Part shown: in pieces, positions 1,943 to 15,457 of the stretch
Numbering within the stretch: the stretch's first letter is position 1
How the letters are laid out: every line of letters begins with the position of its first letter
Notes under the pieces: model-generated
Seen by the model: only the letters and a program-made list of their open reading frames with translations
Told to the model about the DNA's origin: nothing
Database searches by the model: none
From: Fonticula alba ATCC 38817
Taxonomy: Eukaryota > Protista > Nucleariida
Assembly: GCA_000388065.2 (NCBI GenBank)
Contig: KB932207.1
DNA: 16,103 bases
Direction: 5' to 3' (one strand)
Position numbers and translations under genes: made by a program

Positions 1943-2550
1943 ATGTCTGCCCCGACTCCCGCCGCGCGCGCCGCGACCACCGCCGTCGCCGCCTATCGGT
2001 CGATCACCAACCTCACCAAGAAGGTGCGCGCCAGCCGGGTGGGGGGTATGATACCCGGGCGTGGGATCTGGCCGCCTGATGGCCTATATTGACACTCGCC
2101 GCCTGCTCGCCGACCTCTGTCCTCGCCCCCCCCCCCCCTCCCCCCCGGCCGACAACTGCCCAGACCCTGCCGAAGGCCAACCACGACGCGGTGCGGACGA
2201 TGCTCCGGGCGCAGATCGCCGCCGGGCCCCGGCTGGACGGCCGCCTGCCGGAGCCGGGCAAGCCCTTTGTCTTTGCCACGTCCTACCGCGCCGGGGCCAA
2301 CGACATCCAGGACCTGGCGGTGTATCTGGACTCGGTGTACCACCGGGATCGCCTGGTCACCCTCTACAACACGCCCATCGTGTCGGAGGATATGATGGTC
2401 GAGCGGACGGCCGCCCGTGTGGGGCTCTCCCTGCCGCGCCTGACCGGCGAGAACCTGCGCGAGGACCTGACGCACTTCCACAACAAGGGGCAAACCGCCG
2501 CCGAGATGGCCGCCATGGCGGAGGACTTCTCCGAGATGGTCAAGAACTGA
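1943..2550 (+). CDS. FMC1: Mitochondrial ATP synthase (complex V) assembly factor FMC1 homolog, ~155 aa, 2 exons
   Basis: Exons 1943-2023 and 2164-2550; phase-0 intron GTGCGC...CAG (140 nt). N-terminal AYRSITNLTKK resembles yeast Fmc1 TYRGLIKAILK. C-terminal YLDSVYHRDRLVTLYN...VERTAARVGLSLP resembles yeast FLDNQREYEELVDRYN...VKRTANVVGLDVP and human SAGLVGLKLP (recalled sequences). Confidence 0.8.
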
Positions 2551-2862: not shown

Positions 2863-5325
2863 TTAGACGACGCCGCCGCCCGGCGCCGCGGCCACTGGAC
2901 CCACGTGCGATCGCAGGGCGGCCGCCAGGCGGACGAAGGCCTGCCCGGCGGAGCAGGCCCTGTGGCCGCCGGCCCGCAGGCACCGGAGCACGTCCTCCAA
3001 GGCCCGGCGCAGTGCCGGCGGCCAGGGGGCATCCAGGCGAATGAGGGCCCGGTCGGGGCCGGACCGGCCGGCCGCCGATCCTGCCCCGTCCAGCATCTGG
3101 CCCAGCTGCTGGGTGTCGACGGCCGGCGGGCTGAGGGTCACGCTCGCTAGCAGGCTGGCCAGGTGGGCCAGCTCCCGGGCGATCTCGGCCTCGGGGGCCG
3201 GCGCAACGCCCGGAGCCGCCTCCTCGCGCGTGTCGCGCTTCGGGGTGGGGCACACCTCCGGCCAGCCCCCCTGCAGCGGACTCCGGAAGAGCGGCATCGC
3301 CTCGGCGTCGTTGAGGTAGACGCTGAGCCGGCGGCCCGGGCCCCAGGCCACCTGACCATCCCGGCCGGCGCATCGGCGTCCGCGCCGAGGGAAGACCCCG
3401 CCACCGGGCCCGGGTTGCGTCAGTGTCAATGCCGGGGGCGTGTGGTGCGAGGCAACTTGGCGGGCAGGTGCGCACGAGAAATTGGCTGGGCTTGAAGTCG
3501 TGCTGGAGGAGGGCCCCGCGCAGGGGCGACCGCTCGACCATGCCAACCCCCAAGACCGGGTGCTCGGGGCAGATGGCGGCCACGTCGTCGTGGAGAAAGG
3601 CGTGCAGTCGCAGCAGCTGCAGAGCCAGGGACATGCGGGCGGCCACGTCCAGGTGAATGCCCTGCCATCGCGCGACATGGGCAGACGCGGGGGGGGGGAG
3701 CCGGCCGGGACCGAGGGGGAGCCGGGCGGTCCGAAAGTCGGTGCCACCGCGAGGCGACGTGACACGGGCACCGGTCACGACGAGGCCGTGGCGCGGGGCA
3801 AAGGCAATGCGTCAGCGACAAAGTGCGGCGGGCAGCCGCGCACCAGCCCGGCAGCGTGTATGCATGCGTGTCTGTGCCTCCGGGCCTGTACCTCCAGAAT
3901 GGCCGTAGATTCGAGGTTGTCCAGGGACCCGAGTTCGGCGAAAGGAGCCACCGCGGCTTTGAGGTCCCCGGGGCGGGCCCCCTGCAAGTGGATTGAGTCA
4001 GGCCGTGAGCATGCGCACGCGCATGTGCGAGTGTGTGCGTGTGGGGGCATGAGAGAGAAAGAAAACAGGGGAGAGGAGGGATCATGGAGAGCCCGGGTGT
4101 AGGCATGCGTGGCAGTAGGGCCGTGCCCGATGCGACGAGATGGCTGCACAGGCGAAAGAGCCGTACGCACCGTACGCCGGGCCTCGACGAGCTTGCGACC
4201 CAGCTCCGGCGTGCCGTACCCGGTGAAGCCCTCCCAGCGTGGACACGCGGCCAACAGGGGCCAGACGTTCGGATGTCCGGCGAGGGCACTGGTGTCGATG
4301 TGCCCAGTCGGATATGCATACACACACACACACAGGCACACACACACACACACCCACGACCACACATATGGCCGCGCGCATGTATCGCAGGGGGCGCGCG
4401 CCGGCGGCGGAAAGTGTTAGGGTCCAATTGCATGGCCGAGCAGGCCGAGAGGCGTGTTCCCAGGCTGCCCTGCCGTCGGCCTGGCCGCCTTTTTGAGCCT
4501 TCCCCCCGGGAAGGGGGGGGGGGGGAGGCGGGGGGCCAAATGAGGAAGAGCGCACATTAGTCGGGAGATGCCGCTGGAAAAGTCGCCGATGAGATTTTCC
4601 CGGCGGAGGGCCAGCACCGCCACCGGGACCCGGCGCCCGGAGCCGCGATCCAGCCAAGTGCTTCGATGGATGGATTTGACGGTGCCCTGGGCCACTGGCG
4701 GGTCGGCTCGCCAGTCACCCGCCGGCAGACCCTGGCGCATGTGGTCACAGGAGCTTGGGCCAGTGCGAAGCAGGGGGGCGGGAGCCACCGCGAACGGCGG
4801 CCATGCGTGCTTGAGAGATCAGTCTTCCGGCTTCAGGCGGGCGGGCTGGCGGCAAAGGGGACCGAAGAGGCAGCCGCACCCGACAGCTCTCCCGGCCGGC
4901 CGGTACAGGGGCTGGCCTTCGAAGGCCACCCACCAGCGCAGGGCCAGCGGGAGGACCTCCACCGGGACGCTCTCCACCGGGAGACTCCCCCCGGCCACGG
5001 CACCGGTCCAGCACTCTTCCAGCAGGGGGACATCCTGCAGGGCGTCCAGCATTTCGGCGCACCGGGCCGCGCCCCGGCCGGACCCCGGCAAGCGCACCGA
5101 CCTCGGGTCCGGCAGCGGCGGCTCGGCCTCCTCGGCGGCGGCGGCGGCGGCGGCTGCGCGGCGCTCGGCGGCCCAGGTGCCTCGCCGCCCCGCCAGCAGG
5201 TCCAGCCCTACGGACAGTCCCCCGAGAGCCAGCATGACCAGCATCAGCAGGGTGACCAGGCGCCCGGAGGAGAAGCGCCGCTTGGCGCGGTAGGCCCGGA
5301 GCTCCCGGTATAGTCGATCGGACAT
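2863..5325 (-). CDS. POMK: Type II membrane secretory-pathway kinase of the POMK (SgK196)/PKDCC group, ~508 aa, 6 exons
   Basis: Exons 5325-4880, 4753-4556, 4288-4171, 3981-3892, 3661-3476, 3351-2863. All five introns are GT-AG with matching phases; total CDS 1527 nt. Basic N-terminus followed by a TM helix (LVTLLMLVMLALGGLSVGLDLLA). Motifs: SCDHMR, VAQGTVK, VAVL (no beta3 Lys), DFSSG, HPNVWPLLAAC, LGSLDNLEST, RMSLALQ..FLH, HDFKPSQFL, YLNDAEAMPL. Recalled human POMK has SCEELR, VGEGAVK, VALS, DFLHG, THVVTLLGYC, LGSLSNLEET, RLELAM..YLH, SQYLL, LANDLDALPL. Strict orthology to POMK versus PKDCC is not established, and the first intron's boundaries are the least certain. Confidence 0.8.
4320..4353. 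repeat. Imperfect (CA)n microsatellite in kinase intron 2
   Basis: cacacacacacacaggcacacacacacacacac. Confidence 0.9.
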
Positions 5326-5466: not shown

Positions 5467-5678
5467 NNNNNNNNNNNNNNNNNNNNNNNNNNNNNNNNNN
5501 NNNNNNNNNNNNNNNNNNNNNNNNNNNNNNNNNNNNNNNNNNNNNNNNNNNNNNNNNNNNNNNNNNNNNNNNNNNNNNNNNNNNNNNNNNNNNNNNNNNN
5601 NNNNNNNNNNNNNNNNNNNNNNNNNNNNNNNNNNNNNNNNNNNNNNNNNNNNNNNNNNNNNNNNNNNNNNNNNNNNNN
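5467..5678. other. Assembly gap (212 N)
   Basis: Run of N, directly preceded by a G homopolymer. Confidence 0.99.
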
Positions 5679-6034: not shown

Positions 6035-7421
6035 TCACAAGAGGATGCGCCGGATGGCGTCGCGATCGCCCAGCTCCCCGAGGGCGGCCTCGGCGCGGAA
6101 GAGGCAGCCATAGCAGTGGATCCGGGGGTCGGCCGCGGCCGGGGGCCCGGAGGTGACCGGGCCGCGCCGGCCGCCCCGGACGGCGGGGACCTCGGGCGGC
6201 GAAGCACCGCACTCCGGGCAGGCAGCCTCGGCGAGCTTGGTCGAGCCGAAGGGCTGCCATACAAAGGGGCGGGGGGAGCGCAGGGCAAGCGAAGAGCATG
6301 AAAGGGAGCCGGAGGGGGGAGGGGAGCGGGAGAAGGGGGCGCGGGCCCGGTCAGCAGCGGTGCGAAAGGGGCGTGGCCATCGGTCGCGGCGTACCACGCG
6401 CCAGGGGAGGTTGACCGGCGGTGCGGGGGGAACCACGCGCGGCACAGGGGGCTTCGAGAAGGCCGCCGATTCCGAGTGGAGGCTGTGCGAGATCCAAGTT
6501 TGCGCGGCTGAGACGGCGATCGCCACGCCAAACCGGACGGCTCGCGCCCAGCCGGCATCGCTGTCTGGAATGTGTCCCGGCACCTCGAGCTGGGCCGGCG
6601 GCGCCGGCAAGGGGGCGAGGAAGGGAGGGATGAAGGGGCCAGGAGGGGGGGGAGGGGTAAGCAGGCGAGGGGCGGCCCGGGGAGCGGCACAGGGTCCGGG
6701 GCATACCGTCCGATGGAGCTGTTGTCCGGCCAGCCAAGCGGACGCCGAGGTGGGGAAGAGGCGCCGAGGCTTCCACCCGGAGATGTGAAGAAGGGCCAGG
6801 CAAAGGCGCGTCCACTGGGAGGTGTTGAAGCACACTCGCGCGAGAGCGGCGAGCTGGCGGCCGGTAGGGGGAGGGCGGGGGAGACATGTAAGGCGCCTGC
6901 ATTGAGGGAACAGAGCTGAAGATCGCCGATGAAGGCAGCAGAGGGAACAGGAAGAGGAGCAGGGGCGAAGAAAGGGGAAGAGAGAGAGGGAGGACGGGGG
7001 GGGGGGGGGGAAGATGGATACCACACGAAGGGCCACTCGGCCGGCATGCGCCGCCGAGGCGCGCGCTCGTTGCATGCCCGTCAAGGGGCCGGCCGGTGCC
7101 GGCAACGCGGCAGCAACTTCGCCGGCCGTCCCGGGGTCCGACCCGGCCGCCGGGCCGAAGTCCACCCGCATGCCGAGCTCCTCATCCTCGGCCTCATCGG
7201 TGGCGGCGGCGGCGGCGGCGGCTGCCCCGCTGCCGTTGAGCCCCAGCCAGCGCCGGAGCAGGTGCATGGCAATCGGCAACAAGGCCAAGACCGCCAGAGC
7301 CCGGGCGCGCGACCCAACCGTCAACGGCCGGAACCCCTCCGGGGTGTCGGGCGCCCGCTCGAAGCGCCGCAATCCGTGGAGGTGCTCAGCGAAGGACGAA
7401 TCTGTATCCCGCCCCCCGGGC

Positions 7422-10379: not shown

Positions 10380-10430
10380 NNNNNNNNNNNNNNNNNNNNN
10401 NNNNNNNNNNNNNNNNNNNNNNNNNNNNNN
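10380..10430. other. Assembly gap (51 N)
   Basis: Run of N. Confidence 0.99.

Positions 10431-10744: not shown

Positions 10745-15457
<4,713 letters not shown>

What the first reader, a model, noticed from the sequence alone, without database searches (positions are those of the whole stretch)
2863..5325. POMK/PKDCC-like lumenal kinase in a genome that looks non-animal
Seen: a 6-exon gene that appears only after splicing (the ORF track breaks it into fragments). It encodes a type II membrane kinase with 8 lumenal Cys, a Gly-loop/beta2 Lys (AQGTVK), no beta3 Lys (VAVL), LGSLDNLE, and a DFG equivalent NDAE followed by AMPL. Established: animal POMK is an atypical kinase with these same substitutions and phosphorylates O-mannose (core M3) on alpha-dystroglycan, a pathway usually regarded as animal. 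Inference: if the host is a unicellular opisthokont, lumenal glycan or protein phosphorylation by this family predates dystroglycan and acts on an unknown substrate.
Basis: partly seen in the sequence, partly recalled or inferred. Interest (0 to 1): 0.85.

Follow-up and report, generated by a model that had tools for sequence, protein, structure and literature searches.

The report
Divergent POMK-like lumenal kinase in Fonticula
The amoeba Fonticula alba, a relative of fungi, has a real six-exon gene for a membrane-anchored kinase whose closest known relative is the animal sugar kinase POMK, but it belongs to a small undescribed sister family that has only part of POMK's unusual active site, so its substrate is probably a glycan other than POMK's.

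Summary
Window 2863-5325 (minus strand) is a six-exon GT-AG gene. Its 508-aa product is identical to NCBI H696_04317 of Fonticula alba, an amoeboid opisthokont on the fungal side, not an animal.

Pfam and NCBIfam give no match, and the protein alone does not reach POMK. It has only six relatives among 1.84 billion representative proteins, all from uncultured eukaryotes. A profile of that family hits POMK at E=1e-20, against 1.6e-5 for the next kinase. The structure model also ranks POMK first (Z 16.9 against 14.2). No PKDCC, DIPK or Fam20 protein appears in the top 30.

- **Shared with POMK:** Gly-loop Lys, no beta3 Lys, Gly in place of the alphaC Glu, Gln metal ligand, D-x-E-A in place of DFG, the alphaB-beta4 Cys pair, and type II topology.
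- **Not shared:** the MCD motif, the five-residue catalytic-loop insert, the catalytic-loop/activation-segment disulfide, and the front of the sugar groove.

So it is POMK-like but not POMK proper. It is probably an active lumenal glycan kinase with an unknown substrate.

POMK homologues in choanoflagellates and Capsaspora, and the point that they predate dystroglycan, are already published. Interest is moderate. This scan had not noted the gene on other DNA.

The parts
2863..5325 (-). Whole coding region of H696_04317 (start ATG at 5325-5323, stop TAA at 2865-2863); 508 aa
   Evidence: Exact mapping of P0001 onto the window with GT-AG introns; 100% identity to the NCBI Fonticula alba protein.
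4880..5325 (-). Exon 1: basic cytoplasmic N-terminus, signal-anchor helix (aa 23-45 = 5259-5191), Ala-rich poorly conserved stem with C89 and C105
   Evidence: Hydropathy peak 2.42 at aa 23-41; seven R/K in aa 1-22. Stem has pLDDT below 50.
4556..4753 (-). Exon 2: C151 (4749-4747), Gly-loop with Lys (AQGTVK, 4692-4675), beta3 strand VAVL with Leu at the Lys position (4623-4612), alphaC motif GDFSSG (4587-4570)
   Evidence: Alignment to POMK and to BRI1.
4289..4555 (-). Intron 2 (267 nt, phase 2), with a (GT/CA)n microsatellite at about 4308-4366. Its position and phase are shared with two metagenomic relatives
   Evidence: L002 and L010 donors lie two nt into the codon after ...RL.
4171..4288 (-). 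Exon 3: beta4 strand with invariant A-C-P-x-W (C230 = 4245-4243)
   Evidence: A228, C230, P231 and W233 are invariant in the family. C230 aligns with the POMK beta4 Cys.
3892..3981 (-). Exon 4: hinge and alphaD region with LGSLDNLE (3933-3910)
   Evidence: Aligns with POMK LGSLSNLEE.
3476..3661 (-). Exon 5: alphaE helix, Fonticula-specific insert containing C315, catalytic loop HDFKPSQ (3502-3482; D339, K341, Q344)
   Evidence: Canonical register shown by the BRI1 alignment, HRDMKSSN against QKDFKISQ.
2863..3351 (-). Exon 6: NDAEAMP in place of DFG (3312-3292; D361, E363, A364), Fonticula-specific insert with C380, alphaF onwards, then a roughly 85-aa species-specific C-terminal extension (aa 424-508, C470 and C479)
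   Evidence: pLDDT is low for 368-398 and for most of 420-508.

Best explanation
The gene encodes a type II membrane protein. It has a short basic cytoplasmic tail, one signal-anchor helix, a disordered stem and a kinase domain that faces the ER/Golgi lumen.

It belongs to a small family, not modelled by Pfam, that is the closest known relative of protein O-mannose kinase (POMK/SgK196). The family shares POMK's 'migrated' ATP site:
- a Lys replaces the third Gly of the Gly-loop (K175);
- there is no beta3 Lys (L196);
- Gly replaces the alphaC Glu (G210);
- Gln replaces the catalytic-loop Asn (Q344);
- D-A-E-A replaces D-F-G-x (D361, E363, A364);
- the Cys pair aligns with POMK's alphaB-beta4 disulfide (C151-C230).

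It keeps a canonical-length catalytic loop (D339, K341). It lacks POMK's MCD motif, the alphaCL insert and most of the activation segment.

Because every residue needed for phosphoryl transfer is present and conserved across the family, I infer an active kinase. Three points favour a sugar hydroxyl on a secretory-pathway glycan over a peptide as acceptor: the P+1/APE part of the activation segment is missing; the back wall of POMK's sugar groove is conserved (D206, A364, and Tyr at position 203 in most members); and the domain is lumenal. With the front wall of POMK's trisaccharide groove absent, the glycan is probably not the core-M3 trisaccharide in POMK's binding mode.

Shown here: the gene structure, the host, the topology signals, homology to POMK and the motif map. 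Inferred: catalytic activity, lumenal location, glycan substrate.
For: - **Gene and host:**
- **Topology:** hydropathy, positive-inside charge and all eight Cys beyond the helix. N-terminal hydrophobic anchors are also present in P0002, P0003, L002, L009 and L010.
- **Family:** only six relatives at E<=1e-3 among 1.84e9 representatives. They lie on eukaryote-type contigs. One phase-2 intron is shared by three lineages.
- **Sequence link to POMK:**
  - profile A1 against PDB gives 5gza 1e-20 and 5gz8 2e-17, next BRI1 at 1.6e-5;
  - profile A4 gives 5.5e-20 against 6.2e-5;
  - P0002 alone gives 8.8e-14 against 0.11.
- **Structure link to POMK:**
  - VIA-align against 48,161 PDB representatives gives POMK Z 16.9 at 24% identity, next IRAK1 Z 14.2 at 16%;
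  - the three POMK entries are the top three in pdb_via;
  - seven vertebrate POMKs are in the Foldseek Swiss-Prot top 30, with no PKDCC, DIPK or Fam20;
  - the ESM-atlas structure search gives POMK the best TM by hit, 0.69.
- **Residue equivalences:** HMMER alignments to POMK and BRI1, read against the functional map in Zhu et al. 2016 (PMC5142810).
Against: - No transcript evidence was obtained.
- The Fonticula protein alone matches no Pfam or NCBIfam model. By phmmer it reaches only the MET N-lobe at E 0.03-0.09, so the POMK link is transitive through P0002.
- The AF2 model is mediocre: mean pLDDT 57, with the core at about 60-80. Plain Foldseek does not separate POMK from receptor tyrosine kinases.
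- Fonticula has Leu, not Tyr, at the Y113-equivalent position. It is also the most divergent family member.
- No POMK, PKDCC or DIPK sequence could be obtained, so there is no phylogeny.
- A language-model feature search puts a mollusc 'PKDCC-like' cluster first for both P0001 and P0002 (0.97).
- Nothing here tests activity, location or substrate.
Confidence: 0.6

Rival explanations
1. It is the true Fonticula orthologue of POMK. It phosphorylates the 6-position of O-mannose in a core-M3-type GalNAc-GlcNAc-Man glycan, as in animals, on a substrate other than dystroglycan.
For: POMK is by far the nearest known protein. Two residues that line the back of POMK's trisaccharide groove and matter for activity, D116 and A228 (PMC5142810), are invariant in the family as D206 and A364. 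Y113 is kept in most members. An unchecked first-reader note reports a POMGNT2-like GT61 gene about 1.08 Mb away on the same scaffold. Choanoflagellates are reported to have the full M3 enzyme set (PMC8478517).
Against: The front of the groove has no counterpart: the main chain of the MCD Cys, N204, and C241-G242-H243 with the disulfide the disaccharide arches over. The catalytic loop is five residues shorter and the activation segment is largely missing. MCD is reported as conserved from Capsaspora to Trichoplax (PMC3696010), so this protein lies outside that uniform group. The presence of POMGNT2, B3GALNT2 and the other pathway enzymes in Fonticula was not tested.
Confidence: 0.18
2. It is a secretory-pathway protein kinase, functionally like PKDCC/VLK or Fam20C, that phosphorylates lumenal or secreted proteins.
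For: The fold is closest, after POMK, to TKL/RLK and tyrosine kinases. The feature-based atlas search ranks a 'PKDCC-like' cluster first. One family member gives a faint PIP49_C match at E=0.14.
Against: There is no P+1 loop or APE equivalent. In P0002-type members only about eight residues separate the DFG equivalent from the alphaF helix. No PKDCC, DIPK or Fam20 entry is in the Swiss-Prot structural top 30. P0001 gives no PF12260 match.
Confidence: 0.12
3. It is a catalytically dead pseudokinase that acts as a lumenal scaffold or lectin-like binder.
For: It lacks the beta3 Lys, the alphaC Glu, HRD and DFG as written. It escapes all Pfam kinase models. The Fonticula copy is the most divergent member and carries long low-confidence inserts.
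Against: POMK has the same 'pseudokinase' look and is active (PMC5142810). K175, D339, K341, Q344, D361 and E363 are present and conserved in every family member that covers them, which is the pattern expected under selection for catalysis.
Confidence: 0.08
4. The gene model is an annotation artefact: a chance chain of GC-rich ORFs, or a pseudogene.
For: No RNA evidence was found. At about 70% GC, long spurious ORFs occur on both strands. The roughly 85-aa C-terminal extension has no counterpart in relatives.
Against: Each junction is confirmed by alignment to relatives that are uninterrupted there. One intron position and phase is conserved in two other lineages. There are no in-frame stops or frameshifts.
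Confidence: 0.02

Closest known systems
Protein O-mannose kinase (POMK / SgK196; PDB 5GZA, 5GZ8, 5GZ9)
   Same: Type II anchor with a lumenal kinase domain. Lys replaces the third Gly of the Gly-loop (G-x-G-[TA]-V-K). No beta3 Lys. Gly at the alphaC Glu position (DF..G). LGSL.NLE after the hinge. Very similar alphaE helix (W..RL..AID....FLH). Gln as second metal ligand. N-D-x-[DE]-A-x-P in place of DFG. Cys pair matching the alphaB-beta4 disulfide. Back-of-groove Asp and Ala conserved. Best sequence and structure match by a wide margin.
   Different: The catalytic Asp sits in QHD/QKD with canonical D..K(+2)..Q(+5) spacing, not in MCD with a five-residue alphaCL insert. There is no MCD-Cys/activation-segment disulfide. 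The activation segment is mostly absent, so N204, C241, G242 and H243 of the trisaccharide site have no counterpart. The beta3 position is Leu, not Ser. The Fonticula copy adds two inserts (C315, C380) and a C-terminal extension. Members do not reach Pfam PF07714 significance.
PKDCC/VLK and DIPK/FAM69 (Pfam PIP49_C) secretory-pathway kinases
   Same: Cys-containing kinase domains in the secretory pathway. The literature describes them as the nearest kin of SgK196 (PMC3696010). The atlas feature search ranks a 'PKDCC-like' cluster first.
   Different: P0001 gives no PF12260 hit, and only one of seven family members gives a faint one at E=0.14. None is in the Swiss-Prot Foldseek top 30. There is no EF-hand insert. 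By the literature these are protein kinases or orphans.
RLK/Pelle-IRAK and other TKL kinases (BRI1, RIPK, SYMRK, IRAK1)
   Same: Next-best sequence matches (E about 1e-5) and structure matches (Z about 14). The catalytic loop has the same length and register.
   Different: Those are cytosolic, with beta3 Lys, alphaC Glu, HRD, Asn, DFG and a full activation segment.
WNK kinases
   Same: The catalytic Lys has moved into the Gly-rich loop (noted in PMC5142810).
   Different: WNKs are cytosolic and otherwise canonical. No specific similarity was found here.
Fam20B (xylose kinase) and Fam20C
   Same: A functional analogy only: lumenal kinases, one of which acts on a sugar.
   Different: They belong to a different, distant kinase-like family. 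No hit in any search here.

Membership tests
POMK / SgK196 | Type II transmembrane anchor followed by a lumenal kinase domain | tested here: met
   One hydrophobic helix at aa 23-45 after a basic N-terminus, with all eight Cys beyond it. Other family members have the same layout. Orientation is predicted, not measured.
POMK / SgK196 | Sequence similarity to POMK clearly above that to other kinases | tested here: met
   Met at family level: E=1e-20 against 1.6e-5, and 8.8e-14 against 0.11 for P0002. The Fonticula sequence alone does not meet it.
POMK / SgK196 | [quoted passage not shown] | tested here: met
   K175, L196 and G210 by HMMER alignment to 5gza and 5gz8 and to BRI1. The beta3 residue is Leu instead of Ser.
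POMK / SgK196 | Catalytic Asp in an MCD motif, in a catalytic loop five residues longer than PKA with helix alphaCL (K208, Q212 Dr) | tested here: not met
   The loop reads QHDFKPSQ (QKD.K..Q in relatives) in canonical register with BRI1's HRDMKSSN. Asp, Lys and Gln are present, but there is no Met-Cys and no insert.
POMK / SgK196 | Disulfide between the MCD Cys and an activation-segment Cys (C201-C241 Dr), required for activity | tested here: not met
   No Cys at either aligned position in any family member. C315 and C380 sit in Fonticula-only inserts on either side of the active site and might pair in an analogous way; this is untested.
POMK / SgK196 | DLD in place of DFG, followed by Ala (D225, D227, A228 Dr) | tested here: met
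   N-D361-A-E363-A364-M-P aligns with N-D-L-D-A-L-P. The second acidic residue is Glu.
POMK / SgK196 | alphaB-beta4 disulfide (C72-C139 Dr) | tested here: met
   C151 and C230 align with these two Cys (5gz8 domain 1) and are conserved in every member that covers them. The bond itself was not observed.
POMK / SgK196 | Trisaccharide groove residues Y113, D116, N204, A228, C241, G242, H243 (Dr) | tested here: not met
   Only D116 (D206) and A228 (A364) are kept. Y113 is Leu203 in Fonticula but Tyr in most relatives. N204, C241, G242 and H243 lie in segments the family lacks.
POMK / SgK196 | Phosphorylates Man-O6 of GalNAc-b3-GlcNAc-b4-Man | not testable with these tools
   This needs a biochemical assay.
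PKDCC / DIPK (Pfam PF12260 PIP49_C) | Match to the PIP49_C model, or structural proximity to PKDCC/DIPK | tested here: not met
   P0001 gives no hit at E<=10. One of seven relatives reaches E=0.14. None is in the Swiss-Prot Foldseek top 30. The atlas feature hit is a lead only.
Fam20 kinases | Match to Fam20 sequence or fold | tested here: not met
   No Fam20 hit in Pfam, PDB sequence, PDB structure or Swiss-Prot structure searches.
Canonical eukaryotic protein kinase (Pfam PF00069 / PF07714) | Significant match to the Pfam kinase models; beta3 Lys, alphaC Glu, HRD, DFG, APE | tested here: not met
   P0001 matches no Pfam model. Two of seven relatives match PF07714 weakly, best E=2.3e-4. The fold is a protein-kinase fold, but of these residues only the Asp of the HRD and DFG motifs is kept.

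The most novel reading that the evidence does not exclude
This may be an unrecognised, old family of lumenal sugar kinases, present in the fungal-side opisthokont Fonticula and in several uncultured eukaryotes, one of them AT-rich. It would preserve the intermediate stage of POMK's 'active-site migration'. On this reading the Lys, the alphaC Glu and the DFG had already changed, while the catalytic loop was still canonical and there was no activation-segment disulfide. The family would phosphorylate a glycan unrelated to dystroglycan, for example on the secreted matrix that Fonticula uses to build its stalk. That would date POMK-type glycan phosphorylation to the opisthokont ancestor or earlier, and would give the order in which POMK's odd active site was assembled.
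Probability: 0.3. Interest if true: 0.6.

Novelty: new variant of a known kind. Interest (0 to 1): 0.42.

Why it matters
POMK is the textbook case of a 'pseudokinase' that turned out to be an active glycan kinase with relocated catalytic residues. It is also a muscular-dystrophy gene.

A natural relative with half of those relocations offers three things:
- a way to order the steps of active-site migration;
- a minimal scaffold for structure-function work, since P0002-type members are only about 260 residues beyond the anchor;
- a handle on what POMK-type kinases did before dystroglycan existed.

It also extends the family from Holozoa (published) to the fungal side of the opisthokonts, where it was reported absent from Fungi (PMC3696010).

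The gain is incremental. That the M3 enzymes predate dystroglycan is already in the literature.

Tried and rejected
**Searches that led nowhere**
- Pfam on the exon-wise translations and on the full protein, and NCBIfam, gave no match even at E<=10.
- phmmer of P0001, or of its core 140-420, against PDB gave only a marginal MET N-lobe match.
- The word-indexed homologue search with two family alignments returned only family members, and one search had already used the first of the three searches. No POMK, PKDCC or DIPK sequence could therefore be obtained. A phylogeny and an hhalign comparison against those families could not be run, and I did not type sequences in by hand.
- RNA: the three runs under the species label hold none of the stretch and nothing was laid on it.
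- Foldseek against PDB confirms a kinase fold but does not separate POMK from receptor tyrosine kinases.
- afdb_clusters and the atlas shape search added nothing beyond 'TK/TKL-like kinase, POMK among the best'.
- The first metagenome scan failed because the alignment had no conserved stretch. A three-sequence alignment worked.
- Pfam on ten neighbouring ORFs found only a RhoGEF, so the neighbours give no functional context.

**Readings considered and rejected**
- Animal or bacterial contamination: the gene has introns and lies on a 2.16-Mb Fonticula scaffold.
- Ordinary cytosolic kinase: it has an anchor, a conserved Cys pair and the POMK link.
- PKDCC, DIPK or Fam20 membership: see the membership table.
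- The Lys in VAVLK of some relatives as a displaced beta3 Lys: it is Arg or Ala in other members and lies one residue past the Lys position, where BRI1 has the second Lys of its VAIKKL.
Full report
**What is in the sequence.** The window is about 70% G+C, with two assembly gaps. On the minus strand between 5325 and 2863, the prokaryote-style ORF list shows only fragments. A search with the last fragment returned a 508-aa protein at 100% identity: NCBI 'hypothetical protein H696_04317 [Fonticula alba]', called 'Protein kinase domain-containing protein' in UniRef, on a 2.16-Mb contig.

Mapping that protein back onto the window gives six exons: 5325-4880, 4753-4556, 4288-4171, 3981-3892, 3661-3476 and 3351-2863. 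The five introns are 124-267 nt long and all are GT..AG.

Fonticula alba is an opisthokont of the order Rotosphaerida, on the fungal side and not an animal. An earlier agent's note had named the species; one search confirms it independently.

**Is the gene real?** I could get no transcript evidence. The three runs listed under the species label hold none of the sampled words, and nothing was laid on the stretch. The comparative evidence is good, however.
- Relatives whose genes are uninterrupted (P0002, P0003) align across every one of the five junctions, with at most a 1-4-residue length difference.
- The phase-2 intron directly after the codons for ...GDFSSG-x-x-RL is at the same place and phase in two other lineages, L002-L004 and L009/L010.

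A chance chain of GC-rich ORFs would not show either pattern.

**The protein.** Seven Arg/Lys in the first 22 residues precede a single strong hydrophobic helix at aa 23-45. All eight Cys (89, 105, 151, 230, 315, 380, 470, 479) follow it, and there are no N-glycosylation sequons.

**Database position.**
- Pfam and NCBIfam give no match at all, even at E<=10.
- Against PDB sequences, the protein or its core reaches only the N-lobe of MET, at E 0.03-0.09.
- An exhaustive phmmer scan of 1.84 billion representative proteins found just six relatives at E<=0.001. All are unnamed proteins from metagenomes or SRA assemblies.
- Their contigs look eukaryotic. They carry split cap-methyltransferase ORFs, a CUE-domain gene, an aspartic protease, COX24 and an O-fucosyltransferase.
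- A metagenome scan added two more intron-bearing loci.
- Where the N-terminus is present, every member has the same layout: a hydrophobic anchor, then G-x-C, then the kinase domain.
- Only two of seven members touch PF07714 weakly (best E=2.3e-4), and one touches PIP49_C at E=0.14.

This is therefore a small family outside the curated models.

**Link to POMK.**
- A profile of the family hits the two POMK crystal sequences at E=1e-20 and 2e-17. The next protein, BRI1, is at 1.6e-5. A three-sequence profile gives the same picture.
- P0002 alone gives POMK at 8.8e-14 and 1.1e-9, against 0.11 for the next hit. P0001 matches P0002 at 1.3e-22, so the chain of homology is solid.
- I modelled P0001 with AlphaFold2 on the ten-row family alignment. 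Mean pLDDT was 57, with the core 150-370 mostly at 60-80.
- Plain Foldseek confirms a protein-kinase fold but does not separate POMK from receptor tyrosine kinases.
- VIA-align puts the three POMK entries first: Z 16.9, 16.9 and 15.8 at 24-25% identity, with the next at 14.6.
- An independent pass over 48,161 PDB representatives puts POMK first at Z 16.9, against 14.2 for IRAK1.
- In Swiss-Prot AlphaFold models, seven vertebrate POMKs are in the top 30, five of them at ranks 2-6. No PKDCC, DIPK or Fam20 entry appears.
- The ESM atlas gives POMK the best TM by hit (0.69) and the most shared features. Its top cosine hit for both P0001 and P0002 is a mollusc 'PKDCC-like' cluster. I could not follow that lead.

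**Residue-level comparison.** I used the functional map of Zhu et al. 2016 (PMC5142810) and the printed HMMER alignments.

| DrPOMK feature | Fonticula / family | Status |
|---|---|---|
| Gly-loop Lys K91 | K175 | shared |
| Non-Lys at beta3 (S106) | L196 | shared |
| Back-of-groove Asp D116 | D206, invariant | shared |
| Gly at the alphaC Glu position (G120) | G210, invariant | shared |
| alphaB-beta4 disulfide C72-C139 | C151 and C230, invariant | shared |
| Second metal ligand Q212 | Q344 | shared |
| D225-L-D227-A228 | D361-A-E363-A364 | shared |
| Y113 | Tyr in most relatives, Leu203 in Fonticula | partly shared |
| MCD motif with five-residue alphaCL insert | QHD-F-K-P-S-Q (QKD.K..Q in relatives) | not shared |
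| C201-C241 disulfide | no Cys at the aligned positions | not shared |
| Activation segment with C241, G242, H243; N204 | largely missing | not shared |

The family's catalytic loop aligns position for position with BRI1's HRDMKSSN. The catalytic Asp, Lys and Gln therefore sit at canonical spacing.

The activation segment is also cut down. In P0002-type members only about eight residues separate the DFG equivalent from the alphaF helix.

Fonticula alone has two inserts, one before the catalytic loop and one after NDAEAMP. Each carries one Cys (C315, C380), which might pair in an analogous way; this is speculation.

It also has a roughly 85-aa C-terminal extension with C470 and C479 and no counterpart elsewhere.

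**How it most likely works.** All residues needed for ATP binding and phosphoryl transfer in the POMK scheme are present and conserved family-wide. I therefore infer an active kinase rather than a pseudokinase.

The anchor, the positive-inside charge and a conserved Cys pair matching a POMK disulfide point to a lumenal domain. The family lacks a P+1/APE region but keeps the back wall of POMK's sugar groove (the strongly conserved GDFSSG and NDAEA motifs). This favours a sugar acceptor over a peptide. Loss of the front wall argues against POMK's binding mode for the core-M3 trisaccharide.

I put about 0.6 on 'active lumenal POMK-like kinase acting on a glycan of unknown identity'. The rivals are a true core-M3 O-mannose kinase (about 0.18), a secretory protein kinase (about 0.12), a pseudokinase (about 0.08) and an annotation artefact (about 0.02).

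The nearest canonical outgroups (BRI1, IRAK) have the short catalytic loop. The simplest reading is that the family keeps the ancestral loop and that MCD, alphaCL and the second disulfide are later holozoan additions. Without a rooted tree, secondary loss is not excluded.

**Against what is known.**
- Dudkiewicz et al. 2013 (PMC3696010) reported the SgK196 group in Metazoa, choanoflagellates and Capsaspora, 'but not Fungi'. They noted remote plant homologues and found MCD conserved in those unicellular species.
- Bigotti and Brancaccio 2021 (PMC8478517) concluded that the M3 enzymes, POMK included, predate dystroglycan because choanoflagellates have them.
- Full-text searches found no paper that combines POMK with Fonticula, and none linking POMK/SgK196 to Holomycota, nucleariids or Amoebozoa.
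- What is new is a divergent, unmodelled sister family on the fungal side of the opisthokonts and in uncultured eukaryotes, with a partial version of POMK's active site.

**Limits.** There is therefore no phylogeny and no profile-profile test against those families. Whether Fonticula has POMGNT2-, B3GALNT2-, FKTN- or LARGE-type enzymes, or a second MCD-type POMK, was not tested. One unchecked first-reader note mentions a POMGNT2-like gene about 1.08 Mb away. The organisms behind the metagenomic relatives are unidentified.

**Verdict.** It is a new variant of a known kind, of moderate interest.

Noticed in passing
window 4289-4555; L002 about 3690-3740; L010 about 1853-1950; L009 about 6190-6290: The phase-2 intron directly after the ...GDFSSG-x-x-RL codons is at the same position and phase in Fonticula and in two metagenomic lineages. 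The P0002-type gene (L001, L005-L008) is uninterrupted there.
   Followed up: partly
window 5467-5678 and 10380-10430: Two runs of N (assembly gaps). The first lies only 141 nt upstream of the kinase start codon and is flanked by poly-G, so the promoter and 5' UTR of the gene are not fully represented.
   Followed up: no
window 4308-4366 (intron 2); shorter runs in intron 3 (about 4020-4050): (GT/CA)n microsatellites sit inside the introns. Read laying also flagged 4308-4366, 4497-4540 and 5122-5165 as repeats.
   Followed up: no
window 2089-2550 (+): A 153-aa ORF with ordinary protein-like composition (ending ...EDFSEMVKN) converges on the kinase gene, ending about 300 nt from its stop. It has no Pfam match and is probably part of a neighbouring gene.
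   Followed up: partly
window 12558-15383 (-): Pfam RhoGEF domain (PF00621, E=9e-22) in the long minus-strand ORF.
   Followed up: partly
P0001 aa 309-333 and 367-398 (window about 3589-3515 and 3291-3196): Two Fonticula-only inserts flank the active site, and each contributes a single Cys (C315, C380). They may form a disulfide analogous to POMK's catalytic-loop/activation-segment bridge. Other family members lack both the inserts and the Cys.
   Followed up: no
ESM atlas, queries P0001 and P0002: The same mollusc cluster, auto-named 'extracellular tyrosine-protein kinase PKDCC-like' (419 aa; PIP49_C in 48% of members), is the top feature hit (0.97) for both proteins. Exhaustive phmmer did not find it. 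It may be an animal relative worth including in a phylogeny.
   Followed up: no
L001 18109-20583 (-): On the 48-kb metagenomic contig that carries the P0002-type homologue, an 824-aa O-fucosyltransferase-family gene (PF10250) lies about 7 kb away. This is probably coincidental in a eukaryote.
   Followed up: no
P0003 (JGI metagenome, 592 aa): One family member is AT-rich, with long Ser/Gln/Thr low-complexity N-terminal regions unlike the GC-rich Fonticula type. This hints that the family spans quite different eukaryotes. The organism is unidentified.
   Followed up: no
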